DNA of 63,477 bases, filler included, from Octopus bimaculoides (GCF_001194135.2; 3 parts of 3 records of this genome joined end to end with filler, not necessarily neighbours in it); one strand, 5' to 3'; positions 14,736 through 40,069 are shown, numbered from the whole stretch's first letter. Notes: a model not told the origin generated them from the letters alone. Made by a program: numbers and translations.

Positions 14736-17700
14736 GTCTTGTAAACTACAGAAGTTATAACTCGACAAAATTCACTACACGTTGTAGTTTTTGTAGCGGG
14801 CCCAATAAAGATTTGAGGTCCCAAATTCCTACTGAAATTGTAAAAACTCAAAAATGACTTGAAATTTGAAAATTGTGGGGAGAACTTGATAAGAATTCTA
14901 TACCCCGTGCAAATTTGGCAGAGTAATTTACATTTTATTCAAAAAAAGAAACGGTTACATGTCCAAAAGCAGCAAAACCGACTAGAACATACCTGCACCA
15001 TAATGTGATAGTGATGCACAGAGGACCCAAATACAGTGTCAAACACGTTGTACAAGGTCTAGTGCTTTAGCATCTGAACAAAACCACTCGATAGTAAATG
15101 CCAAATATCGTGTGTCAGATCTCAAAACCAACAGAGCGGGTAAGAGATTTTAGTACTTGGCTACTAATATAAAGAACAAGAGCTACAATTGAAGCAAGAT
15201 CAGCCGATGGATTACAAGTTTTAAAAGTCAAGTACGCAAGCTATATGTTATCTATGATGAGCTAACGAGGATATCCCTTGCGTTGTCGCTGGACCTTCTA
15301 GGAATAATAATGGTTTCAAATTTTGCCACGAGGACAGCAATTTTCGGGGAGGAGATGAGTCGATTACATCGACCCGTGTTCAACTGGTACTTATTTTATC
15401 GACCCCTGTGTTCAACTGGTACTTATTTTATCGATCCCAAAAGGATGAAAGGCAAAGCCAACTTCGGTGGAATTTGAAATCAAAACGTAACGACGGTCGA
15501 AATACCGTTAAGCATTTCGCTCGGTGTGCTAAAGATTCTGCCAGCTCGCCGCTCTTTTAAATAATACCCGACCGTCTTAAATAAGGGGAGATTATTAGTA
15601 GATACTGTAGAGTAGTTTTAGTTCTAAAAAGAAGGCATGATCACGGAAGTTTTTGATCATAGTTTTTATTTGATCGGCGTTAGCTTGGGATCACTTATTA
15701 AGCAATAACAACCACAACCACAACCACAACAACGACAACAAGTTGATTGACTTCATGGACTACTCGCTGAACTCAAATATCCAATAATGCTATTGTTCAC
15801 GAAGACATATGGTAAATGAAAAAAATATTGATTATTTTGCATGATTAATATGAAAGTCCATGCTATATTGCATTATTTCTAAATATTCCTTAACATCATC
15901 AAAGCAACGTCCTCTCTCTTTCCCACACCGACAGCACAGAATATTTGGTTTCTATATAAGACAGTTATAAAATAGTGGAAGATTCAACTAACGGCAAAGG
16001 AGTCCCCTTCCTCTTTACATCCATTTTAAACAGTGGAAATGCGCTTACATTTTTATAATTTCGTATGCCGTGTTTTACATAAAGTATATAGCTCTGTTTG
16101 TGAGAAACTGTGAAAAGCACAAATACACAAATCCAGCACTATCCATTGTGTAAATGGTTTAAATTGCGACTGGATTATAAAAGCTGAATATTCTGTGCAA
16201 TCAATTGGGGATGCATATCGAGTGCGTCTCAGCTGAAGAGCAGTCAGCAAACTACAGAAGAATAAGTCGTAAGTCTCGCGCATCTTTTCCGTACAACAAA
16301 TGCATTGAACAAATGCGTCTATTAGCTTTTAATTCCATCTNNNNNNNNNNNNNNNNNNNNNNNNNNNNNNNNNNNNNNNNNNNNNNNNNNNNNNNNNNNN
16401 NNNNNNNNNNNNNNNNNNNNNNNNNNNNNNNNNNNNNNNNNNNTATATATATATATATATATCGTTCGGCTTAACGGACCTTAACGTTGTTTTCACTGTT
16501 TAATTTTTCCTGTCTTGGTTTTTGTTTGCTACTTTGGAATCCTCCGCTTAGCAGGTTAATCCACTTCGCGGGAAGAGCTATTCTAAGACCGCGTTCTACC
16601 TTATCTTCGAAACGCCTAGTTTAGAATAGAGGCAGCTGATGAAAGAAAAGTTCCAAAAGTGGCTTGTCTGTTTTCCTATGTGTTCATTCTGTTGTCCGTA
16701 AAAAAGTCCGTTTTTTTGTGCTTTCTTTATGCTCTCGATCCTTTTTTGTCCACGTTTTTTGGCGTCCTGTGCCCGGATATGCATCTATATATACATGTAG
16801 ATGTAGGTACGTACATATATGTATGTATACATCCATATGCTCATATATCATTTGTATTATATATATGTAAAAAATACAAAAATGGGACAAGAATGCAAAA
16901 CATCTCGACAGACGATACAAGGAAAACAAGGACGGGTCATTCGGAGTTTTCTATCCTCAGTCGAGTTCCAGATTATCGCATACGCACACACACGCACACT
17001 CTCACACACACATACACAAAAGCTTACATGTATGCATACGTATACAAATATATTACTAATAAAAACGAGACAAAAACCATGTGAAAAGTAGCTACCTAGG
17101 GTTTCCTGACCAGAATTTTAAGTATATTTTGTCGTTTCTCAAGCTGGTAATGTCAATATGGTGGGTTAGCTCCTCCGTATGAGTGAAGTGATGTTTAAAA
17201 GACCATATACATGCATTAAAAAGACTGAGAGTGATCAAGGGGAGAGCAAGTAGAGCCAGACTCTAATAAGGGGATAAAATTTCGCAAACCAACACGGGAA
17301 GCACATAAGATAAATAAACAGTGGGAAGATTATTGGGATTATAGATGTTGTTCCAATGACGTTCGTTGTTCCAGAAGATGACCCGTTGTTGTTCAGCAGC
17401 TAATTACACTTGGAACTTCCAATGCAGCGGTTGCAAATGACCACAATGGTGAAACAGACGTAGGGAACAAATAATATAAACGTGTGTTTATCATAATTTC
17501 TCCAACATTTGCTCTTTATAATCATAACCAGTAATATTAACAAGCATAATAATAATTATACCAGTCTACTAGAAGCAGATTGGATGGTAAAATTCTACAT
17601 GTTACTCTAAACTCACCAGAAGCAGTCGTACATCTAACTGTACACACAAGATAAACTATATACTCCACTCCACTATACCATACAATACTATACCATACAA

Positions 17701-19945: not shown

Positions 19946-20045
19946 NNNNNNNNNNNNNNNNNNNNNNNNNNNNNNNNNNNNNNNNNNNNTTAATTAATTA
20001 ANNNNNNNNNNNNNNNNNNNNNNNNNNNNNNNNNNNNNNNNNNNN
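19946..20045. other. Synthetic scaffold-joining spacer (44N-TTAATTAATTAA-44N)
   Basis: The 12-mer places stops in all six frames, is centred in exactly 100 nt, and recurs identically at 40143-40242. Confidence 0.9.
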
Positions 20046-20497
20046 CTGCTGCTCTCACCTTCGCCGTAATAACCTCGCATTTCTGAGATATCCTCATGTC
20101 CGTTCTCCAAAACCTGCAAGTTCTGAAGGGCTGGCAGATAGGCGAATAGATCCAGAACCCGTTGGCTTATTTCCGAAATCCTAGTGTTCGGTGTCGAGTC
20201 GTTGGTGTGTTCAGCCGCTTTCACCGCTTCTTTTTTTGCCATAGATACGATATTTTTCCATTTTTTCTTCACCTCACGAACGGTTCTTTTAACGCCTGGG
20301 TTCCTCAAATGTAATCCAACCGTGATTTCAGACCAGATGTTGTTTTTCCTGCGGTTTGTGTCCGTGCTACAGAACTTAGCCGTGAGGATATCTTTGTGTT
20401 TTTCAAACTGCTCCACCAGATACAGTGTTTCGGTGCCTGTGAAAAACGGTTTTCTTTTACGACTCTCGAGTAAATTGCATGAAAACGAGTATGTCAT
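20046..20497 (-). CDS. Myb/SANT-like DNA-binding domain protein (Myb_DNA-bind_5 type; MSANTD/NAIF1-like), 3' end truncated at the scaffold edge
   Basis: Open frame RKRKPFFTGTETLYLV...KNNIWSEIT...RTVREVKKKWKNI. The ATG is in a strong context (gccaacATG) with an in-frame upstream TAA. The frame stays open until the N spacer. Confidence 0.85.
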
Positions 20498-25441: not shown

Positions 25442-26467
25442 CTATACTAACAAATAAAGATAATCTTTTTTACTCTAGGCGCAAGGCCCGAAATTTTGAG
25501 GGGAGAGGGGGGGCAGTCGATTAGATTGACCCAGTACGCAACTGGTACTTAATTTATCGACCCTGAAAGGATGGAAGACAAAGTCGACCTCTGCGGAATT
25601 TGAACTCAGAAAGTAAAGACAGACGAAATACCGCTAAGCATTTCGCCCGGTGTGCTAAAGTTTCTTATTTATTTACTGCCCACAGGAGGCTACACACAGA
25701 GGGGACAAACGGATTAAGTCGATTATATCGACCCCAGTGCGTAACTGGTACTTAATTTATCGACCCCGAAGGGATGAAAGGCAAAGTCGACCTCGGCGGA
25801 GTTTGAACTCAGAACGTAACGGCAGACGGCCAGCTCGCCGCCTTAACAAGTAAATATAATCACCACATCAACGTGTCTCTGTCGTCTGCTGGAGGATAGT
25901 AGGGCTTTGCTCCCCTGCTGGCAATATCTGTATGTTCAGGGTGCAGCGCTGCACCGATAACCAGCCTGGCGGAAGATCTGCCTGGGGTTAAATTAGTGGT
26001 AGCACGAACAGCCACATAGATGTGGCGATTACCTTTATTTGTTTGTATAGTTACTACTCTCATCTCTTATTGAGATTTTACGACTATATATATGTGTATG
26101 TGCGAGTGTGTGTGCGTGTATATATACAGTTAATAAAACATATACCACAACTTTATATATACATGTGTGTATGTTTATATATAGATGTGTGTGTGTATAG
26201 ATATATATACACATACATATTTATACATATATATATATATATATATAATCAAAATAGGTAACAGGATTTCAAGTAGTAATTGAGGTGAAATGAGTATATA
26301 TGTATGTGTGAGTATATGTATATATATATATTTCATATCTGATGTTATATTACATATTTTATTATATCATTTTTTTATAGTATCAGCGGTAAGCGAGAGG
26401 AAAATACGCAACTAAAACAGCCATCTTCCACCTGCGCAAGAGAGAATTATGGGATATTGACATCCGG

Positions 26468-26497: not shown

Positions 26498-26520
26498 ATG
26501 GGTCGTATGCACTGTCCAGG
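26498..26520 (+). CDS. RPS13: 40S ribosomal protein S13 (uS15), coding exon 1 (MGRMHCPG)
   Basis: ctcaacATG GGT CGT ATG CAC TGT CCA GG followed by donor gtgagt. Matches the RPS13 N-terminus MGRMHxPG and joins exon 2 in phase 2. Confidence 0.95.
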
Positions 26521-26872
26521 GTGAGTGAATAGAAATCTATTTTTCATCAATAATTAACAAATTCTTCAGCAATTTTTCACCATATTTCCTTTGTTAAAGT
26601 CGTAAATGTTCCCCTGGTATGCAATTTTCAGTAAATTCTATTTGGCTTTTCGGTGAAATTAGAAAATAACGTGGTGAAATGTCGAGTTCTCTGTGAATGA
26701 AAAAGATGTTGCGGTTTATTTTATTAATAATGAACAATTCAGCAAGTTTTCATTTTACTTCACATGTAACATCTCGGTGTGCAAATTTCAGTGAAATCTT
26801 TTGTACTTTTCGGTGTAATTAATGGATAATTCGTGGTGAAATATGGGTTTTGCGTAAATGTAAGAGACTTTC

Positions 26873-26883
26873 AAGATGGCGGC
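26873..26883 (+). promoter_or_regulatory. YY1-type motif (AAGATGGCGGC) in RPS13 intron 1; a second GCCATCTT lies at 26420-26427 upstream of the start
   Basis: Exact match to the YY1 consensus in the CpG-richer promoter-proximal region. Binding is not demonstrated. Confidence 0.5.
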
Positions 26884-28481
26884 CGGTGGCTTTTGAGAGA
26901 CACGCACGTGCAGTGGACGATCACGGTGGGGCAATGTTTCGTGTATATTAATCTTGTATATAATGTGTATATAGGTGTGCATATATATATTTCGATTTGT
27001 AGTGGGGGGTTTTTATGTGTATATGGTTTCGTAGTTTGTATATTTTCTGTATCTTTGTGTTGCGTATAGAGGTTGGTGGGGGGGAGCAATTAGAAATTGC
27101 AGTAAAATGAGTAATTTTTTTGTATTTTCTCCCGATCGGTTTGAAATCATTACATCGCAAATATTGCATCATTTTGTATAGTTACATTATATTTAGGAGT
27201 AAAAATTGGCCAGCGTTAGGAATATAGTCAGATGACGGGTATTTTTATCAAGAAGTTGTCCCTCAGCTTTGACCTGATTATAACTCGAAACAAGATAAAT
27301 CGAAATATTGCGATCAATGTTTCCATGTAATGGCATTTGATAATTGATTTTTAGACATTTAGATATTACCTTTCGTTCATTCGGCACACCCTAATTGTAA
27401 TATATTCCCCGGATCTTTTTGTCGATGTACCTGACCTCAATGGATATTTTCCGCGGAACCACTGACGGAGATGTTAGGAAACCAAATTCACCCCTAGGCA
27501 TGGCAGAACGTGCCACGCAGTGAGACTGAACCCGGAAACACGTGTTTGCAATCAGAACTTAAAAAACACAGCCATGCCCAAGTCTATACACGAACTCATT
27601 ACTCTCTTACTTGTTTCAGTCATTTGACTGCGGCCACGCTGGAGCACCGCCTCTAGTCGAGCACATCGATCCCCAGGGCTTTGTAAGCCTAGTACTTATT
27701 CTATCGATCCCCTTTGTCGAACCGCCAAGTTACGGGGATGTACACACACCAGCATCGATTGTCAAGCGATGGTGGAGGGACAAATATACACACACCAAAA
27801 TACACCCTGGAAGAACGTAAAACGACGTATGACGGGAAAGATTCAACAAAAAAAATTATTTACTTTGTTTTAAAAAAATCCCTCATACATGTTTTGCGCA
27901 CTGAGACCACTCTTGGATAGTACCAGATTTTTGGTGGGGTGTGGGTTTANNNNNNNNNNNNNNNNNNNNNNNNNNNNNNNNNNNNNNNNNNNNNNNNNNN
28001 NNNNNNNNNNNNNNNNNNNNNNNNNNNNNNNNNNNNNNNNNNNNNNNNNNNNNNNNNNNNNNNNNNNNNNNNNNNNNNNNNNNNNNNNNNNNNNNNNNNN
28101 NNNNNNNNNNNNNNNNNNNNNNNNNNNNNNNNNNNNNNNNNNNNNNNNNNNNNNNNNNNNNNNNNNNNNNNNNNNNNNNNNNNNNNNNNNNNNNNNNNNN
28201 NNNNNNNNNNNNNNNNNNNNNNNNNNNNNNNNNNNNNNNNNNNNNNNNNNNNNNNNNNNNNNNNNNNNNNNNNNNNNNNNNNNNNNNNNNNNNACCAGAA
28301 GGATAATCCGGTCAATATAAAGATCTGCACCCGGGAACAATAAAAATAAACCAACTTGGCATCTTGAATAAAACCGAAAAAATTCTAAAATTTGACACCG
28401 AAAGATAGCAATGTTAAAAGTCTTAAGGGTTTTTAGAAATTGAAAAGTAACCTAAAGTAATCGCTCTTTAAGTCGTAGATT

Positions 28482-28585
28482 GGCACTATCATGCTATTAG
28501 CTGTCAGAAGTGAAAGTGCTCACAGACAGATACTTCACTAGCAGTGAGCACTTTCACTTCTGACAGCTAATAGCATGATAGTGCC
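28482..28585. mobile_element. 104-bp hairpin MITE, probably hAT type (42-bp perfect TIRs, 20-nt spacer, 8-bp TSD)
   Basis: Arms 28482-28523 and 28544-28585 are exact reverse complements. Flanks are cgtagatt and cgtagatc. The paralogous units show the empty site cgtagatc. Confidence 0.85.
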
Positions 28586-28670
28586 CGTAGATCACGCCAA
28601 AGTAGCACTGAATATTCTATATATCTGTTCTTGATCAGGGTTTGATCATAGTAAATATATTTGTTCTATC

Positions 28671-28753
28671 AGTCATTATGATGTTATTGAAACTAATCCC
28701 AGCTCTCTGAGTAATCTTTTTACTCTTGATGAGTTTAGTATTTCTGAATGACT
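28671..28753 (+). ncRNA. Box C/D snoRNA family A copy 1 (snR69-like; predicted 28S Cm at the yeast C2948 equivalent), RPS13 intron 1
   Basis: Terminal stem agtcatt/aatgact; box C ATGATGT; D' CTGA; internal stem gagtaa/ttactc; C' TTGATGA; D CTGA. The D' guide cccagctc is complementary to conserved 28S GAGCUGGG, and the +5 rule points to the C. Confidence 0.8.
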
Positions 28754-29339
28754 TTGTTGGATATGCTAATTCAAATCCACCGCAAGTTTGACCGAACTAA
28801 AAAATCGGTCAAAAAATAAATATACGGCCCTGGTTATATGCATTCAAGTGTTTCAGGATTTCTTTATTCTATATAAAAATAGCGACAATTTCCACCTTTC
28901 TTCAGTCCAAAGGCCCAGAGTCCATTGATGTGTCTTCTACTTCAGCTTCGCTATCAGTTGAATCAGGGACATGGTCTCCTTGCAGCATACTACCTCAGTT
29001 GTATTGTTGGCGTCCTGCAGACAGCTTCATCAATTTGCACAGGCTCTTCAGTTCCAACCATTTTTTCCATGATAGTTAAAGGAAACAATATGAATAAATT
29101 TCACAATACCTGTTGAACCAATCACCTATTGATTCAGTACCTCTAACAGTTAACTGATGCATCTTCAATAAAACCAAAGAAATTCTAAAATTTGACACCG
29201 AAAGATAGCAATGTTAAAAGTCTTAAAGGTTTTTAGAAATTGAAAAGTAACCTAAAGTAATCGCTCCTTAAGTCGTAGATCACACCAAAGCAGCTCTGAA
29301 TATTCTATATATATCTTCTTGATCAGGGTTTGATCTATC

Positions 29340-29422
29340 AGTCATTATGATGTCATTGAAACTAATCCCAGCTCTCTGAGTAATCTTTTTACTCTTGATG
29401 AGTTTAGTATTTCTGAATGACT
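29340..29422 (+). ncRNA. Box C/D snoRNA family A copy 2, RPS13 intron 1
   Basis: Near-identical to copy 1, with all boxes, stems and the guide intact. Confidence 0.8.
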
Positions 29423-30069
29423 TTGTTGGATATGCTAATTCAAATCCACCGCAAGTTTGNNNNNNNNNNNNNNNNNNNNNNNNNNNNNNNNNNNNNNNNN
29501 NNNNNNNNNNNNNNNNNNNNNNNNNNNNNNNNNNNNNNNNNNNNNNNNNNNNNNNNNNNNNNNNNNNNNNNNNNNNNNNNNNNNNNNNNNNNNNNNNNNN
29601 NNNNNNNNNNNNNNNNNNNNNNNNNTTCTTCAGTCCAAAGACCCAGAGTCCATTGATGTGTCTTCGTTGGTTTCTGTCTTCTACTTAGCTCCTCTATCAG
29701 TTGATTCAGTACCTCTAACAGTTAGCTGATGCATCTTATTATAAGAGGCATCTCGGATAAAACAAAATTAATTCTAAAATTTGACACCGAAAGATAATAA
29801 TGGATTTTATTTAAATCGGTATAATAGAGAAAAACGTTTCCAGTGAGGACAAACCGATGAGCTTGGCAGCCATGAATTTTGCTATGTTAAAGTCTTAAGG
29901 GTTTTTAGAAATTGAAAAGTAAACTAGAAAGTAATCACCCTTTAAGTCGTAGATCACGCCAAAGTAGCACTGAATATTCTATATATCTGTTCTTGATCAG
30001 GGTTTGATCATAGTAAATATATGTTCTATCATAGTCGTTTGATCATGGTAATATATCTGTTCTGTCATG

Positions 30070-30150
30070 GTCATTATGATGTTATTGAAACTAATCCCAG
30101 CTCTCTGAGTAATCTTTTTACTCTTGATGAGTTTAGTTTTTCTGAATGAC
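30070..30150 (+). ncRNA. Box C/D snoRNA family A copy 3, RPS13 intron 1
   Basis: Near-identical to copy 1; boxes C, D', C', D and the gtcatt/aatgac stem are intact. Confidence 0.8.
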
Positions 30151-30975
30151 TTTGTTGGGTATACTAATTCAATCCCTACTAAGAACTCAGTTCTCTACAG
30201 TGTTTGGGGTTCTCTGATTCAACTGTCTCTCATTTACTCCTATATTTGGTTTGTTTTATTAAGTGCTCTGAATAGGGTCACTGTTTTGATATTTTGTGGG
30301 TAAAGAATTATGGTCTACTTATTAGCATTTAATGCCCATCTTCCCAGCTTGCAAGGTTTGGACAGTTTGACAGGAGCTGGCAGTCCAGAAGACTGCATCA
30401 AGCGCCAATGGTTTTGGGTTCANNNNNNNNNNNNNNNNNNNNNNNNNNNNNNNNNNNNNNNNNNNNNNNNNNNNNNNNNNNNNNNNNNNNNNNNNNNNNN
30501 NNNNNNNNNNNNNNNNNNNNNNNNNNNNNNNNNNNNNNNNNNNNNNNNNNNNNNNNNNNNNNNNNNNNNNNNNNNNNNNNNNNNNNNNNNNNNNNNNNNN
30601 NNNNNNNNNNNNNNNNNNNNNNNNNNNNNNNNNNNNNNNNNNNNNNNNNNNNNNNNNNNNNNNNNNNNNNNNNNNNNNNNNNNNNNNNNNNNNNNNNNNN
30701 NNNNNNNNNNNNNNNNNNNNNNNNNNNNNNNNNNNNNNNNNNNNNNNNNNNNNNNNNNNNNNNNNNNNNNNNNNNNNNNNNNNNNNNNNNNNNNNNNNNN
30801 NNNNNNNNNNNNNNNNNNNNNNNNNNNNNNNNNNNNNNNNNNNNNNNNNNNNNNNNNNNNNNNNNNNNNNNNNNNNNNNNNNNNNNNNNNNNNNNNNNNN
30901 NNNNNNNNNNNNNNNNNNNNNNNNNNNNNNNNNNNNNNNNNNNNNNNNNNNNNNNNNNNNNNNNNNNNNNNNNNN

Positions 30976-31236
30976 CATTTGAGTGTGATCGTTGCCAGTG
31001 CCGCTGGACTGGCTCCTGTGCAGGTGGCACGTAAAAAACACCATTTTGAGCATGGCACGTAAAAGCATCCACTACACTCTTAGAGTGGTTGGTGTTAGGA
31101 AGGGCATCCAGCTGTAGAAAGTCTGCCAGATCAGATTGGAGCCTGGTGCAGCCATCCGGTTCACCAGTTCTCAGTCAAATCGTCCAACCCATGCTAGCAT
31201 GGAAAGCGGACGTTAAACGATGATGATGATGATGAT
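30976..31236 (+). mobile_element. 3' end of the same RTE-like LINE
   Basis: ggaagggcatccagctgtagaa...gctagcatggaaagcggacgttaaac(gat)n matches the reverse complement of 2026-2335. Confidence 0.85.
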
Positions 31237-31553
31237 CACTGCCTTGTTTCTCTGAGATTTTGATGATGTGATTGCTTATTTTGTAGAATAACATTGTAGC
31301 ATAGGTGTGAGAGGCCAGATCTAGCTGATTTTGAACATAAAACAGGTTGAATATTACGGCTGGTTTAAAAGATAGAGGGTTAAATGAAGATTTTAGCTAG
31401 AAATGGCAGCAATTACACTCAAAATATAACAGCATTTCTAACAGAGTTTTGGTTGAGAGTAGAATCTTTTGTGACCAGAAAGTGTTTGAATGGTTTATGT
31501 TGCTGTTATACCAGGTCTTGTAATAATAATGTTTTCTCTCTCTCTCTCTGCAG

Positions 31554-31602
31554 AAAGGGTATATCCCAATCAGCGCTACCATACCGTCGCTCAGTGCCAA
31601 CA
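31554..31602 (+). CDS. RPS13: RPS13 coding exon 2 (KGISQSALPYRRSVPT)
   Basis: Polypyrimidine tract plus cag acceptor, 49 nt, gtaagt donor. Translation matches RPS13. Confidence 0.97.
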
Positions 31603-32515
31603 GTAAGTATACAAAGTGGATTATCTTTTACATGTTGATAGGCGTAGCTGTGTGGTTCAGTCCCATTGCGTGACACCTTGGACAGGTCTTTTATATCTTT
31701 CAAAAGAACTACTTTGAATTCAAGTTTGCTACTTGACAACATGAAGCTGGTACCCAGTTTTCATCCATAGTGCAACATTTCAGAAAATTGAAGTGGTGAA
31801 AAATGGGGAGGAAAAAGAAAAAAAATCTCCAAAAATTCACTGCTCAGATATGTAAAATAATGTCTGTGTAGGGTGTCCATATAATATTTGGAGGGTCCAC
31901 ACGGGCTAAATAGCAAATTTGGGATACACTGGTATTTTAAGGGTTCACGAAAAAAACTTTTACTTTAGATATATTGATTGCCTTTCTGGCATTCAATACA
32001 TCTAAAGCAAAAGGTTCTTTCTGCTTTACATAGTTTAATGTTTCCAGCCACTGAAACCTGTTCTCTCAGACAATTTACTATTGCCAACCTACAAAAGTTT
32101 GTGTGAAAAGCAAAATAGAAATTTTGAAAGGAATATCTATAAAACTAGTTTTCAAATATTGAATGGCTATGGGGGTCCACCAGAATAGATTAGTAGCCAA
32201 AGAAGTCCACGGGTAAAAAAAATAGTTGAGGACCACCAGTGTAACTCAATTGCTTACACAGTAAAATTCCATGTGGTTTGGTTGGGTGTCTACAGGTGGG
32301 TTACTCTTTTACTTGTTTCACTCATTTGACTGCGGCCATGCTGGAGCACTGCCTTTAGTCGAGCAAATCGACCCCAGGACTTATTCTTTGGAAGCCTAGT
32401 ACTTATTCTATCAGTGTCTTTTGCCGAACCTCTAAGTTACGGGGACGTAAACACACTACCATCGGTTGTCAAGCGATGTTGGGGGGGACAAACACAGACA
32501 CGCAAACATATACAT

Positions 32516-32664
32516 GAGTGGTTGGCGTTAGGAAGGGCATCCAGCTGTAGAAACTCTGCCAAATTAGATTGGAGTCTGGTGTAGCCATCCGGTTGCACCA
32601 GTCCTCAGTCAAATCGTCCAACCCATGCTAGCATGGAAAGCGGACGTTAAACGATGATGATGAT
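32516..32664 (+). mobile_element. Short RTE-like 3' fragment nested in a SINE
   Basis: Same 3' UTR and (GAT)n tail, interrupting the SINE at 32302-32820. Confidence 0.85.
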
Positions 32665-32934
32665 ATACGACGGGCTTCTTTCAGTGTCCGTCTACCAAAT
32701 GCACTCACAAGGCTTTGGTTGGCCTGAGGCTATAGTAGAAGACACTTGCCCAAGGTGCCACGCAGTGGGACTGAAGCCGGAACCGTGTGGTTGGTAAGCA
32801 ATCTACTTACCACACAGCAACTCCTACGCCTAGGTAAAGAAAGCGTTAATTCACACAGCCATGGCTTTACACCGATAACGAGATTTAGTTTTGCTGGAAA
32901 TGTAGTGTGGGGAGATGGTGATGTTAATGTTCAG

Positions 32935-33006
32935 GTCATTATGATGTCATTGAAACTAACCCCAGCTCTCTGAAATATTGTGTTGAGCTTAGTTTTTCTG
33001 AATGAC
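32935..33006 (+). ncRNA. Box C/D snoRNA family A copy 4 (diverged), RPS13 intron 2
   Basis: gtcatt-ATGATGT-cattgaaactaaccccagctct-CTGA-...-CTGA-atgac. The flanks are unrelated to copies 1-3, yet the stem, boxes C/D'/D and guide are conserved. C' is degenerate. Confidence 0.78.
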
Positions 33007-33084
33007 TTGCTCATTAACTGGAGTTGCTTGTTAGTGGACTCTAGTCTTAATTATTGTTTGGTAATTATGATACATTGTCTAGAG

Positions 33085-34056
33085 CAGGGGTTGCCGAACT
33101 GAGGTAAATTACCCCAAGTGTGGTAAAAATGAAATTCTTGTGGGTAATGACTCATTAGACATGTCTTTATATTGGAGACCGAATCCAAGACAAGATGGCT
33201 GCCATTTCAAAGTTAGCTTTATCTTTGGAAGATTGAAAATATTACTTTTGACAACATCAAGAATACAGTTAGAAAGCATCTTATTTCTTTATTGCCCACA
33301 AGGGGCTAAACATAGAGGGGACAGACAAAGGGGCTAAGTCGATTACATCGACCCCAGTGCGTAACTGGTACTTAATTTATCAACCCCGAAAGGATGAAAG
33401 GCAAAGTCAACCTCGGCGGAATTTGAACTCAGATCGTAACAGCAGACAAAATACTGCTAAGCATTTCGCCCGGCATGCTAACGATTCTGTGATTACTTTC
33501 CAGATTTTGAGTCACATACTGTCTGTTGGGTTGTAGATGCCTTTAAATGTGAAATTGCTGATGTTCCAGAAGAGTCTCAAGGGACAGCAGACACTTTTTG
33601 AACTTCAATTGAATAATGAAGCACATATTGCATTTGAAAATAAAGCAAATCTGTCACATTTTTGGATGTCAACTGTTGCAAAATTGTGCATGAGGAGGCA
33701 GTCAAAAAAGTTGTTTCCTTGCAACAACCTGCCTTGGCAGACAAGCATTTTCTACCCTGATTAATATAAAAAGAAAGCAGATTAATTAATTGGACCCCAA
33801 AGACTGCATCAAAATGCTCCAGTTTTGGTGTAATTGTAATAAAAATGAAACCTGAAGTGAAAAAGTTTCTAGGAAAATCCTTTTGGTTCATAATAAGGAT
33901 ATTTGATTTATTATATAGCATTTTATACTTTCCATATTTGTAATAGATTCAACAGACCTTTTGAATTCAAAGAATTGTATTTCTTCTGAATCGAGGGGTG
34001 TAACATCAGCGTAAATAAATATTTTGGGGTAATTGGTTAAAGTTCCCTGACCCTTA
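33085..34056 (+). mobile_element. Degenerate hAT (Charlie-like) DNA transposon with a nested SINE
   Basis: Starts caggggttgccgaac and ends gttccctgaccctta. TSD-like gtctagag/gtctaagg fits the Charlie NTCTAGAN preference. Internal residues ATT..QAFSTLINIK resemble the hAT C-terminal dimerisation region. Confidence 0.65.
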
Positions 34057-34624
34057 GTCTAAGGGTAGAGATAATTTTAATAATTGAAAATTTGTTGTAT
34101 GGTATTTGATACACTTTGTCTATAGAGTATAGTAGCTTAGAACTCCCTTTGGATGTCCTCCCTGGTTGAGTGAGTCATTAGGGGATCAGGAGTGTCCCTG
34201 TCATTCAACATTGATCACAGTTTGAGTGGCTAGACTTGAAACTCTCATTATTTAGTTATTGATATTAAAAGAGGTATAAAAAAAAACCGCTTGCTTCAGG
34301 CTGTGGCGATGAAGGGTTTAGTCAAATTAATCCCAGTACTTTTAAGTTTGGCACAGACTTCCCAATGCTGCTGTCTACTAGGGTCATATAGAAGGAACAT
34401 TTACCAAAATTTTTATTAGCGGAAGAATGATTATTAGAGTTTCCCACTAATAGTAAAGATAAGATTTAGATGCAGTGAGGTGGCAGGGTGATAATATATA
34501 TATATATAATGCACAGCATTAAATGAAAGATTTAATAATAAGTTTAATTATTACAAAGCCTGGCTGTAAGTGAAATTAGGATGTAAACACATTTGTTCTA
34601 TGCTTTTATAATGTGTGGGGGAAA

Positions 34625-34834
34625 AGAGGTGATGTTTATTCCCACTTAAATGTGTTTGTTCTGTTAGAACAAGCTATACTGCAGTAGATCCCATGAGAGA
34701 AATGCACTCTTGTTTATATTGATAACAAGGAGACAAATGCCCAAATCACCAGATCACAGAATGTTGGACTTGTTGGTGGTGGATTCTTGACCGCTAGAGA
34801 CAGTGGTGACTCATCTCCCTGCCAGCAATATATA
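34625..34834. repeat. Unclassified ~205-nt element, copy 1 (RPS13 intron 2)
   Basis: Near-identical to 35302-35537, which has two short insertions and one substitution. Confidence 0.9.
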
Positions 34835-35016
34835 TATATGGTGAACACTGGTAGAGAATTTGCTTTGATGAATTCCAATTGACCCAAGCAAGGATGGAAA
34901 CAAGCGCATTAAATGAATCGTCATAATATAGAATAGTTACACTATCACTGTTGTACATTTAAAGCTGTCATCTGTGTGTATCTGTTATCACTTATCTTTA
35001 ATGTTTGTTTCCACAG

Positions 35017-35095
35017 TGGTTGAAACTGTCATCAGATGATGTTAAGGAACAGATCTATAAACTTGCCAAGAAGGGTTTGACGCCGTCCAAAATTG
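35017..35095 (+). CDS. RPS13: RPS13 coding exon 3 ([27 protein letters not shown])
   Basis: ccacag acceptor, 79 nt, gtaagt donor. Translation matches RPS13. Confidence 0.97.
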
Positions 35096-36428: not shown

Positions 36429-36671
<243 letters not shown>

Positions 36672-38238: not shown

Positions 38239-38417
<179 letters not shown>

Positions 38418-38804: not shown

Positions 38805-38883
38805 GGTACCTACAGTGATGATACATAGACAAGCATATGTCTGAGCATAGCTTTGTTGATCAATTCATATCTGAGATGGTACT
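38805..38883 (+). ncRNA. Box C/D snoRNA, U27/SNORD27 (yeast snR74)-like; predicted 18S Am27/28; RPS13 intron 5
   Basis: Stem ggtacc/ggtact; box C GTGATGA; D' CTGA; C'-like TTGTTGA; D CTGA. The guide agacaagcatatg has 13 nt of perfect complementarity to 18S CAUAUGCUUGUCU, and the +5 rule gives the A of CAUA. Confidence 0.88.
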
Positions 38884-39990: not shown

Positions 39991-40069
39991 GGTACCTACA
40001 GTGATGATACATAGACAAGCATATGTCTGAGCATAGCTTTGTTGATCAATTCATATCTGAGATGGTACT
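39991..40069 (+). ncRNA. Second, identical U27/snR74-like snoRNA copy (may be an assembly duplicate)
   Basis: Identical to 38805-38883, inside a 377-bp duplicate that ends at the scaffold edge. Confidence 0.6.

What the first reader, a model, noticed from the sequence alone, without database searches (positions are those of the whole stretch)
28360..33006. Amplified array of unannotated box C/D snoRNAs (snR69-like) in RPS13 introns 1-2
Four copies of one ~72-83-nt C/D snoRNA are present. Three come from tandem duplication of a several-hundred-bp unit within intron 1, and one older copy in intron 2 conserves only the snoRNA. That selective conservation argues for function. The D' guide (cccagctc-t-CTGA) predicts 2'-O-methylation of the C in 28S GAGCUGGG, next to the peptidyl-transferase centre (yeast Cm2948, snR69). 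Several snoRNAs in one intron departs from the vertebrate one-per-intron rule and would need endonucleolytic or trimming-based release (inference). More copies may hide in the N gaps.
Basis: partly seen in the sequence, partly recalled or inferred. Interest (0 to 1): 0.75.

Follow-up and report, generated by a model that had tools for sequence, protein, structure and literature searches.

The report
Multi-copy snoRNA in octopus RPS13 introns
The first two introns of an octopus ribosomal-protein gene (RPS13) carry four copies of a small guide RNA that is predicted to direct methylation of one cytosine at the catalytic centre of the ribosome; the guide is an old, known type, newly seen in cephalopods and repeatedly duplicated there.

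Summary
The piece is the RPS13 (uS15) gene of an Octopus, probably O. bimaculoides. Four copies of one box C/D snoRNA lie at 28672-28752, 29341-29421 and 30070-30150 (81 nt, intron 1, inside a ~590-800-bp tandem unit) and at 32935-33006 (72 nt, intron 2).

The same RNA sits in RPS13 introns of three other cephalopods:
- O. sinensis, gap-free assembly: 3 in intron 1, 1 in intron 2.
- Argonauta hians: 3 in intron 2.
- Sepia pharaonis: 1 in each intron.

Between these species only the snoRNA is conserved in the introns, apart from SINEs. The terminal stem shows two compensatory changes. The D' guide is invariant except at its one mismatched position. It pairs 12/13 with LSU rRNA GAGCUGGGUUUAG and selects the C that snR69 (yeast) and snoR69Y (Arabidopsis, methylation shown) target. 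Rfam scores stay below the gathering thresholds (25 vs 45 bits).

The amplification is lineage-specific, with different breakpoints in the two Octopus species. A U27-like snoRNA in introns 4-5 is amplified too.

Verdict: a new member of a known kind, in an intronic-cluster layout already known from rice and Drosophila.

The parts
26498..26520 (+). RPS13 exon 1 (ATG ... CCAGG|gtgagt), preceded by a pyrimidine-rich TOP-like leader CTCTTTCTTTCCC
26521..31553 (+). RPS13 intron 1 (holds N gaps 27950-28293, 29460-29625 and 30423-30975)
28356..30190 (+). Tandem array of about 2.5 units starting at 28356, 29156 and 29745. Unit 1 carries a 104-nt palindromic insertion. Unit 3 keeps an ~83-nt segment (29803-29885) that units 1 and 2 lack and that O. 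sinensis also has.
28672..28752 (+). snoRNA copy 1 (81 nt): C 28678-28684, guide 28693-28706, D' 28707-28710, C' 28727-28732, D 28744-28747
   Evidence: (93.8 bits)
29341..29421 (+). snoRNA copy 2 (81 nt): C 29347-29353, guide 29362-29375, D' 29376-29379, C' 29396-29401, D 29413-29416
   Evidence: (93.9 bits)
30070..30150 (+). snoRNA copy 3 (81 nt): C 30076-30082, guide 30091-30104, D' 30105-30108, C' 30125-30130, D 30142-30145
   Evidence: (94.1 bits)
31554..31602 (+). RPS13 exon 2
31603..35016 (+). RPS13 intron 2
32935..33006 (+). snoRNA copy 4 (72 nt, shorter D'-C' spacer, C' UGUUGA): C 32941-32947, guide 32956-32969, D' 32970-32973, D 32998-33001. Positional orthologues in O. sinensis, Argonauta and Sepia intron 2.
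   Evidence: (99.1 bits)
35017..35095 (+). RPS13 exon 3

Best explanation
These are genuine intron-encoded box C/D snoRNA genes. They are the cephalopod counterpart of yeast snR69, plant snoR69Y, nematode sn3060 and Dictyostelium DdR16.

Inferred mechanism (standard box C/D biology, not shown here):
- The snoRNAs are transcribed as part of the RPS13 pre-mRNA.
- Boxes C/D and C'/D' bind the core proteins Snu13, Nop56, Nop58 and fibrillarin, and the 5-6-bp terminal stem defines the mature ends.
- The 14 nt upstream of box D' pair with 28S rRNA GAGCUGGGUUUAG: 8 bp, one mismatch, then 4 bp.
- Fibrillarin methylates the 2'-OH of the C opposite the fifth guide nucleotide. This is the equivalent of yeast C2948 and Arabidopsis C2949, next to the peptidyl-transferase centre.

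Shown by sequence: segmental tandem duplication inside the introns has multiplied the gene independently in different octopod lineages. Where several copies share one intron, splicing plus end-trimming alone cannot free them all. Cleavage in the spacers is inferred, as for the intronic snoRNA clusters of rice and Drosophila.
For: Boxes and structure:
- All boxes are present with correct spacing in all four copies.
- The terminal stem appears in the minimum-free-energy fold of all four copies folded.

Comparative evidence:
- 13 copies in four cephalopods, all inside RPS13 introns 1-2.
- The stem is paired in 100% of cells. Two pairs show compensatory change (UA to CG, AU to UA). Only 1 of 500 shuffles reaches the observed covariation score, and slid controls reach 20-36% pairing.
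- Apart from SINEs, the snoRNA is the only intron-1/2 segment of the window that matches Argonauta or Sepia.
- Argonauta copy a resembles copies b and c over just 79-82 nt, which is the snoRNA.
- A covariance model finds nothing else in 169 kb, while SINEs recur 13 or more times in the same loci.

Guide and target:
- The guide is invariant except at position 10, which is the one mismatched position.
- It pairs 12 of 13 Watson-Crick at positions 2-14 with a C at LSU position 2933 of a complete eukaryotic rDNA unit. This is the top target for all five guide variants tested, which together cover all four species. Only 14 of 3000 shuffled guides do as well.
- The best Rfam hit is snoR69Y, whose consensus carries the identical UAAUCCCAGCUCU guide. 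sn3060 and DdR16 carry near-identical guides.

Literature:
- snR69 and snoR69Y target this C, and no human homologue is listed (PMC2780460).
- Arabidopsis C2949 is methylated, and the 8-bp duplex is noted as conserved in yeast (PMC8053127).

Multiple copies per intron are real in a gap-free assembly: O. sinensis L001 has three in intron 1.
Against: - No RNA evidence.
- Rfam scores are far below gathering (25 vs 45 bits for snoR69Y; 27 vs 45 for sn3060).
- Box C is AUGAUGU in octopods, one off the consensus.
- C' is degenerate in several copies: UGUUGA, and UGACGA in O. sinensis.
- One O. sinensis copy has D' CCGA, so not every copy need work.
- The core guide duplex is only 8 bp.
- The rRNA used for target scanning is from an unidentified eukaryote, not a cephalopod. 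The site is highly conserved, but that statement rests on background knowledge.
- Copy number in this gapped assembly is unverified.
Confidence: 0.8

Rival explanations
1. The three intron-1 copies in this assembly are partly an assembly artefact. Alleles or collapsed repeats were laid in tandem by a short-read scaffolder, and the true number in this animal is one or two.
For: One N gap lies inside the array, one just upstream of it and one downstream. The units are 96-98% alike over the shared parts. Reads could not be checked.
Against: The three units differ structurally. Only unit 1 has a 104-nt palindromic insertion with a CGTAGAT target-site duplication. Only unit 3 has an ~83-nt segment that O. 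sinensis shares. There are further indels upstream of the snoRNA. The gap-free O. sinensis locus also has three copies in intron 1. Three distinct variants cannot all be two alleles of one locus.
Confidence: 0.15
2. Only one copy per species is a working gene. The extra copies are neutral by-products of segmental duplication in repeat-rich introns, are not processed into stable RNA, and are on their way to decay.
For: The Octopus duplicates are young (98-99% identical), so selection has had little time to act. One O. sinensis copy has a mutated D' box and all O. sinensis intron-1 copies have a weak C'. Copies far from a 3' splice site, or internal in a multi-copy intron, are harder to release.
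Against: In Argonauta the three copies keep 94-96% identity and all boxes. Their flanks are unalignable for copy a against copies b and c, and partly diverged between b and c. That is the signature of selection on each copy. Sepia keeps two copies in different introns. The U27-like snoRNA shows the same multi-copy habit in all four species.
Confidence: 0.25
3. The unit is a fragment of a dispersed repeat or a snoRNA-derived retroposon, not a resident gene.
For: The introns are full of SINEs, and one abuts an Argonauta copy.
Against: The covariance model finds the element only in RPS13 introns 1-2 in 169 kb from six loci. Its position is conserved from Sepia to Octopus. There is no poly(A) tail. 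The only flanking direct repeat seen, CGTAGAT, brackets the separate palindromic insertion upstream of copy 1, not a snoRNA.
Confidence: 0.03
4. It is a real box C/D RNA but acts elsewhere. Either it is an orphan or processing snoRNA, or it works through the box-D-side element, and the match to the 28S site is coincidental.
For: The core duplex is short (8 bp). An invariant UAG upstream of box D is unexplained.
Against: The D-side element varies in sequence and length between copies. It has no consistent rRNA target and no pairing better than shuffles. The D' guide is the most conserved part, and the same guide has a demonstrated methylation site in plants and yeast.
Confidence: 0.05

Closest known systems
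snoR69Y (Rfam RF01198, plants) / snR69 (yeast), clan CL00051
   Same: Box C/D snoRNA whose D' guide ...UAAUCCCAGCUCU-[C/A]UGA is identical over 13 nt to the plant consensus. It has the same predicted target C (yeast C2948, Arabidopsis C2949) and the same short 8-bp core duplex (PMC8053127).
   Different: The score is 25 bits against a gathering score of 45. It is shorter (65-81 nt against a ~99-nt model). It is intronic in a ribosomal-protein gene and multi-copy. Outside the guide and boxes there is no sequence similarity, so common descent is plausible but not provable.
sn3060 (RF01153) and DdR16 (RF01566, Dictyostelium)
   Same: Their consensus guides, ACAAACCCAGCUCUCUGA and ACUCAGCUCUaUGA, match the cephalopod guide. 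Their size is similar (67-78 nt).
   Different: All scores are sub-threshold (21-27 bits against 45; 17-20 against 70). sn3060 has A at guide position 10, which pairs fully, where cephalopods have U or C.
Intronic snoRNA gene clusters of rice and Drosophila
   Same: Several snoRNA genes lie inside a single intron of a host gene (PMC2780460, background section).
   Different: Here the cluster members are recent tandem copies of one snoRNA, in a mollusc, in a ribosomal-protein host. How they are processed is unknown.
Vertebrate RPS13 as host of U14 (SNORD14) (from my own knowledge, not tested)
   Same: The same host gene, and a 5'-TOP ribosomal-protein gene carrying box C/D snoRNAs in its introns.
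   Different: No U14-like match was found in the cephalopod gene. The cephalopod gene carries snR69-like and U27-like snoRNAs instead. Oyster RPS13 gave no Rfam match with E-value up to 0.5, and Owenia RPS13 gave only weak SNORD15-like matches. Neither holds the snR69-like RNA.

Membership tests
Box C/D snoRNA (class) | Box C (RUGAUGA) near the 5' end and box D (CUGA) near the 3' end | tested here: met
   Box C is AUGAUGU in octopods (6 of 7), GUGAUGA in Sepia intron 1 and GUGAUGC in Sepia intron 2. Box D is CUGA in all 13 copies.
Box C/D snoRNA (class) | Terminal stem bringing C and D together, supported by covariation | tested here: met
   6 pairs, 100% of cells paired, 2 pairs with compensatory change, 1 of 500 shuffles as good, slid controls 20-36% paired. 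The stem is present in the minimum-free-energy folds.
Box C/D snoRNA (class) | Internal D' and C' boxes with a guide 5' of D' | tested here: met
   D' is CUGA in 12 of 13 copies (CCGA in one O. sinensis copy). C' is UGAUGA, UGUUGA or UGACGA.
Box C/D snoRNA (class) | Accumulates as a stable ~60-100-nt RNA bound by fibrillarin, Nop56, Nop58 and Snu13 | not testable with these tools
snR69 / snoR69Y family (Rfam CL00051) | Score at or above the Rfam gathering threshold | tested here: not met
   snoR69Y scored 25.0 bits (copy 1) and 19.7 bits (copy 4) against a gathering score of 45. There was no hit in the full-piece scan at E-value up to 1.
snR69 / snoR69Y family (Rfam CL00051) | D' guide complementary to LSU GAGCUGGG, placing that C opposite the fifth nucleotide upstream of D' | tested here: met
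   12 of 13 Watson-Crick pairs, with C at LSU 2933 of rDNA locus L029 as the best target for all five guide variants tested (all four species), and 14 of 3000 shuffles as good. The guide is identical to the snoR69Y consensus.
snR69 / snoR69Y family (Rfam CL00051) | The target C is 2'-O-methylated in the organism | not testable with these tools
   Shown for Arabidopsis C2949 (PMC8053127). No cephalopod data are available here.
Intronic snoRNA gene cluster (rice / Drosophila type) | Two or more snoRNA genes within one intron of a host gene | tested here: met
   Three in intron 1 of the window and of O. sinensis, and three in intron 2 of Argonauta. U27-like copies in intron 5: two in Sepia, six in O. 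sinensis, at least two in the window.
Intronic snoRNA gene cluster (rice / Drosophila type) | All members released from the intron as mature RNAs | not testable with these tools
   No RNA data are available.

The most novel reading that the evidence does not exclude
Coleoid cephalopods routinely maintain and process arrays of several identical snoRNAs inside single introns. In RPS13, two different snoRNA families were amplified independently in Octopus bimaculoides, O. sinensis, Argonauta and Sepia, with up to six copies per intron. This would mean a spacer-cleaving release pathway not described in molluscs. It would also mean recurrent selection for higher dosage of guides aimed at the ribosome's catalytic and decoding cores, one of them at a site vertebrates have lost.
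Probability: 0.2. Interest if true: 0.55.

Novelty: new member of a known kind. Interest (0 to 1): 0.4.

Why it matters
- It adds a well-supported snoRNA gene, with a predicted methylation site at the peptidyl-transferase centre, to cephalopods. Their snoRNAs are essentially undescribed, and Rfam-threshold annotation would miss this one.
- An ancient guide known from yeast, plants, Neurospora and probably nematodes and Dictyostelium, and listed without a human homologue, persists in lophotrochozoans. Its absence from humans would then be a loss.
- It gives a clean natural example of repeated, independent intron-internal amplification of snoRNA genes. That makes it a test bed for how animals release several snoRNAs from one intron.

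Tried and rejected
- Rfam over the whole piece at E-value up to 1 gave no hit for the four copies. Only narrow-range scans gave sub-threshold hits.
So there was no read depth, no test of the gaps by reads and no expression evidence, and read laying was not attempted.
- A lax guide-target scan (1 mismatch plus 1 G-U in 9 positions) was uninformative: 93% of shuffled guides also hit. It was replaced by the stricter 13-position count.
- A target for the box-D-side element was sought. Hits were inconsistent between copies, and duplex energies within 200 nt either side of the target were no better than shuffles. I rejected it as a second guide or as extra pairing.
- Squid and other decapodiform RPS13 loci were sought. 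The Pomacea RPS13 protein was not on record.
- Oyster and Owenia RPS13 introns hold no copy.
- The left flank of the second gap was compared with all loci, and no informative match was found.
- The crude global flank identities are noisy, with a background of about 40-55%. I rely on BLAST extents instead.
Full report
**What the piece is**

A tblastn search with RPS13, plus inspection of the junctions, gives five exons: 26498-26520, 31554-31602, 35017-35095, 36469-36638 and 38317-38417. All have GT-AG borders. The sixth exon lies beyond the piece. With a guessed last exon, the 151-aa product is exactly the protein held for Octopus bimaculoides, O. sinensis and Argonauta hians. Introns of the window are only about 75-90% identical to O. 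sinensis. The window is therefore a congener, most likely the gapped O. bimaculoides assembly (inference). Intron 1 is 26521-31553 and intron 2 is 31603-35016. Exon 1 is preceded by a pyrimidine-rich, TOP-like leader.

**The observation**

Four copies of one element are present:

| Copy | Coordinates | Length | Intron |
|---|---|---|---|
| 1 | 28672-28752 | 81 nt | 1 |
| 2 | 29341-29421 | 81 nt | 1 |
| 3 | 30070-30150 | 81 nt | 1 |
| 4 | 32935-33006 | 72 nt | 2 |

Each copy reads 5'-GUCAUU-AUGAUGU(box C)-...CUAA[U/C]CCCAGCUCU-CUGA(D')-spacer-UGAUGA or UGUUGA(C')-~10 nt-CUGA(D)-AUGAC-3'. The three intron-1 copies lie in tandem units starting at 28356, 29156 and 29745. Copy 4 shares nothing but the snoRNA with them.

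**The gaps**

- **29460-29625.** The repeat families place the left flank at offset 669 and the right flank at offset 728 relative to unit 1 (D1 and D11). Both flanks are thus collinear with unit 1, which has 107 nt and no snoRNA at that place. The gap is a within-unit hole whose size was over-estimated by about 59 nt. It hides no copy unless whole units were collapsed.
- **30423-30975.** The left flank is unique sequence and the right flank is a dispersed SINE with many copies in the loci. Nothing can be said about continuity or content.

**Is the multi-copy state real?**

The three units differ structurally:
- Unit 1 alone carries a 104-nt perfect palindrome (28482-28585) bracketed by a CGTAGAT duplication.
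- Unit 3 alone keeps an ~83-nt segment (29803-29885) that O. sinensis also has.
- There are further indels upstream of the snoRNA.

Independently, the O. sinensis locus L001 has no N within the gene and shows three copies in intron 1 and one in intron 2. The O. sinensis units have different breakpoints. One breakpoint lies 22 nt inside exon 2, so each unit carries a copy of the 3' splice site and the start of exon 2. In addition, the three O. sinensis copies share derived substitutions that the O. bimaculoides copies lack. The amplifications in the two species are therefore at least partly independent.

**Comparative evidence for function**

Argonauta hians (L002) has no copy in intron 1 and three in intron 2. 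Sepia (Acanthosepion) pharaonis (L003) has one in each intron.

- **Structure.** In the 13-copy alignment A2, the boxes, the guide and the stem are the conserved columns. The 6-bp terminal stem is paired in 100% of cells. Two pairs changed on both sides: U-A to C-G in both Sepia copies, and A-U to U-A in Sepia intron 2. Only 1 of 500 shuffles reaches the observed covariation score, and slid controls pair at 20-36%. The stem appears in the minimum-free-energy folds.
- **Conservation confined to the snoRNA.** BLAST of the window's introns against Argonauta and Sepia returns only SINEs and exactly the snoRNA, for example 32932-33009. Within Argonauta intron 2, copy a matches copies b and c over only 79-82 nt, and b matches c over 136 nt. 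Selection therefore appears to act on each of several copies in one intron.
- **Not a dispersed repeat.** A covariance model built from A2 finds only these 13 sites in 169 kb. It finds none in the oyster or Owenia RPS13 genes.

**The guide**

The 14 nt before D' are invariant except at position 10, which is U or C. A 50-nt stretch of eukaryotic LSU rRNA containing GAGCUGGGUUUAG was found in more than 120 metagenomic contigs. One of them, L029, is a complete rDNA unit by Rfam.

Against its 18S, 5.8S and 28S, every guide variant tested has its best match at that site: 12 of 13 Watson-Crick pairs at positions 2-14. The only mismatch is at the variable position 10, and a C (LSU 2933 in L029) lies opposite the fifth nucleotide. 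Only 14 of 3000 shuffled guides reach 12 of 13.

Narrow-range Rfam scans put snoR69Y first for copy 1 (25 bits, E-value 0.0095). Its consensus UAAUCCCAGCUCU is identical to the octopus guide. sn3060 and DdR16 carry the same core. All scores are below gathering.

The literature agrees:
- PMC2780460 lists snR69 (two yeasts) and snoR69Y (Arabidopsis) as homologues for this C, with no human homologue.
- PMC8053127 detects Arabidopsis 25S Cm2949 by RiboMeth-seq, assigns it to SnoR69Y, and remarks on the 8-bp duplex conserved in yeast. That is the geometry seen here.

By my own recollection of 23S numbering, the site corresponds to E. coli C2579, next to Psi2580 and G2582-U2585 of the peptidyl-transferase centre. 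I did not test this equivalence.

**The box-D side**

The ~10 nt before box D vary in sequence and length. They have no consistent rRNA target and no pairing near the methylation site better than shuffles. An invariant UAG(U) there is complementary to the invariant ACUA at the 5' edge of the D' guide and pairs with it in predicted folds. Both sides are invariant, so no covariation test is possible. I leave it unexplained.

**Mechanism**

- **Shown by sequence:** box C/D architecture, a covarying stem, a guide-target match, intronic location in a TOP-type ribosomal-protein host, and lineage-specific tandem amplification.
- **Inferred from established box C/D biology:** co-transcription with RPS13, snoRNP assembly, fibrillarin methylation at the D'+5 position, and release from the excised intron.

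With two or more snoRNPs in one intron, exonucleases entering from the intron ends cannot remove the spacers. An endonucleolytic step is therefore inferred, or use of internal splice sites such as the duplicated exon-2 acceptors in O. sinensis. This layout, the 'intronic gene cluster', was described in rice and Drosophila (PMC2780460). It departs from vertebrate habit rather than being a new principle.

**Broader pattern**

A U27-like box C/D snoRNA with the guide GACAAGCAUAUG-N-CUGA is also multi-copy in the later introns. Its Rfam scores against SNORD27 are 32-38 bits, below the gathering score of 52.

| Species | U27-like copies |
|---|---|
| Window | at least 2 in intron 5, in a 300-nt repeat at 99% identity, spacing 1186 |
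| O. sinensis | 6 in intron 5 |
| Argonauta | 3 in intron 5, plus a degenerate one in intron 4 |
| Sepia | 1 in intron 4 and 2 in intron 5 |

. Multi-copy snoRNA introns are thus a property of this gene across coleoids.

**Verdict**

It is a new member of a known kind: an snR69 / snoR69Y-type guide. It fails the formal Rfam membership threshold but meets the functional definition. Its genomic layout is known from other phyla and has not, to my searches, been described in cephalopods. Expression, methylation and exact copy number remain to be shown.

Noticed in passing
window 38810-38878 and 39996-40064 (intron 5); L001 25539-30984; L002 20470-26932; L003 15748-16497: A U27 (SNORD27)-like box C/D snoRNA with the guide GACAAGCAUAUG (18S A27 type) is also tandemly amplified. 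There are 2 identical copies in the window (300-nt repeat, 99%, spacing 1186), 6 in O. sinensis intron 5, 3-4 in Argonauta and 3 in Sepia. Scores are 32-38 bits, below the gathering score of 52.
   Followed up: partly
window 28482-28585: A perfect 42-nt inverted repeat with a 20-nt loop, bracketed by a direct CGTAGAT duplication. It is present only in tandem unit 1. It looks like a young MITE or foldback insertion and gives spurious mir-17 / mir-557 hits on both strands.
   Followed up: partly
L001 12702-13053 and 14457-14769 (O. sinensis intron 1): The O. sinensis duplication units each carry a copy of the end of intron 1, the 3' splice site and the first ~22 nt of exon 2. The AG is intact in the second copy and changed to GAG in the first. 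These are potential decoy acceptors upstream of the real exon 2.
   Followed up: partly
window 30985-31232, 32516-32664, 27600-27805, 32302-32513, 33282-33489: Dispersed SINE-like elements, one family ending in (GAT)n, recur many times in the window and in the O. sinensis and Argonauta loci. One sits directly between the second gap and the last 320 nt of intron 1. In O. sinensis a snoRNA copy occupies the equivalent place.
   Followed up: partly
alignment A2 columns 26-30 and 69-73 (e.g. window 28692-28696 and 28735-28739): An invariant UAG(U) just upstream of box D is complementary to the invariant ACUA at the 5' edge of the D' guide, and mimics the rRNA target's UUAG. Predicted folds pair the two. 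Its role is unknown.
   Followed up: partly
window 26088-26240: A (TG/TA)n-type microsatellite upstream of the RPS13 promoter gives false mir-297 / mir-466 hits on both strands.
   Followed up: no
window 31945-32026: A hairpin-forming inverted repeat in intron 2 gives weak plant-miRNA (MIR2593 / MIR1507) hits on both strands. It is also conserved as an inverted match in O. sinensis (16646-16718).
   Followed up: no
window 19994-20497 (- strand): An ORF of 167 aa, cut by the piece's edge, with a Myb/SANT- or MADF-like look (…KKKWKNIVSMAKKE…). It was not searched.
   Followed up: no
L005 3875-4034 and 4774-4932 (Owenia fusiformis RPS13); L003 6054-6173: The annelid RPS13 gene carries two SNORD15-like sub-threshold matches (31-35 bits against 75) instead of the cephalopod snoRNAs. 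A 5S rRNA gene lies upstream of Sepia RPS13.
   Followed up: no
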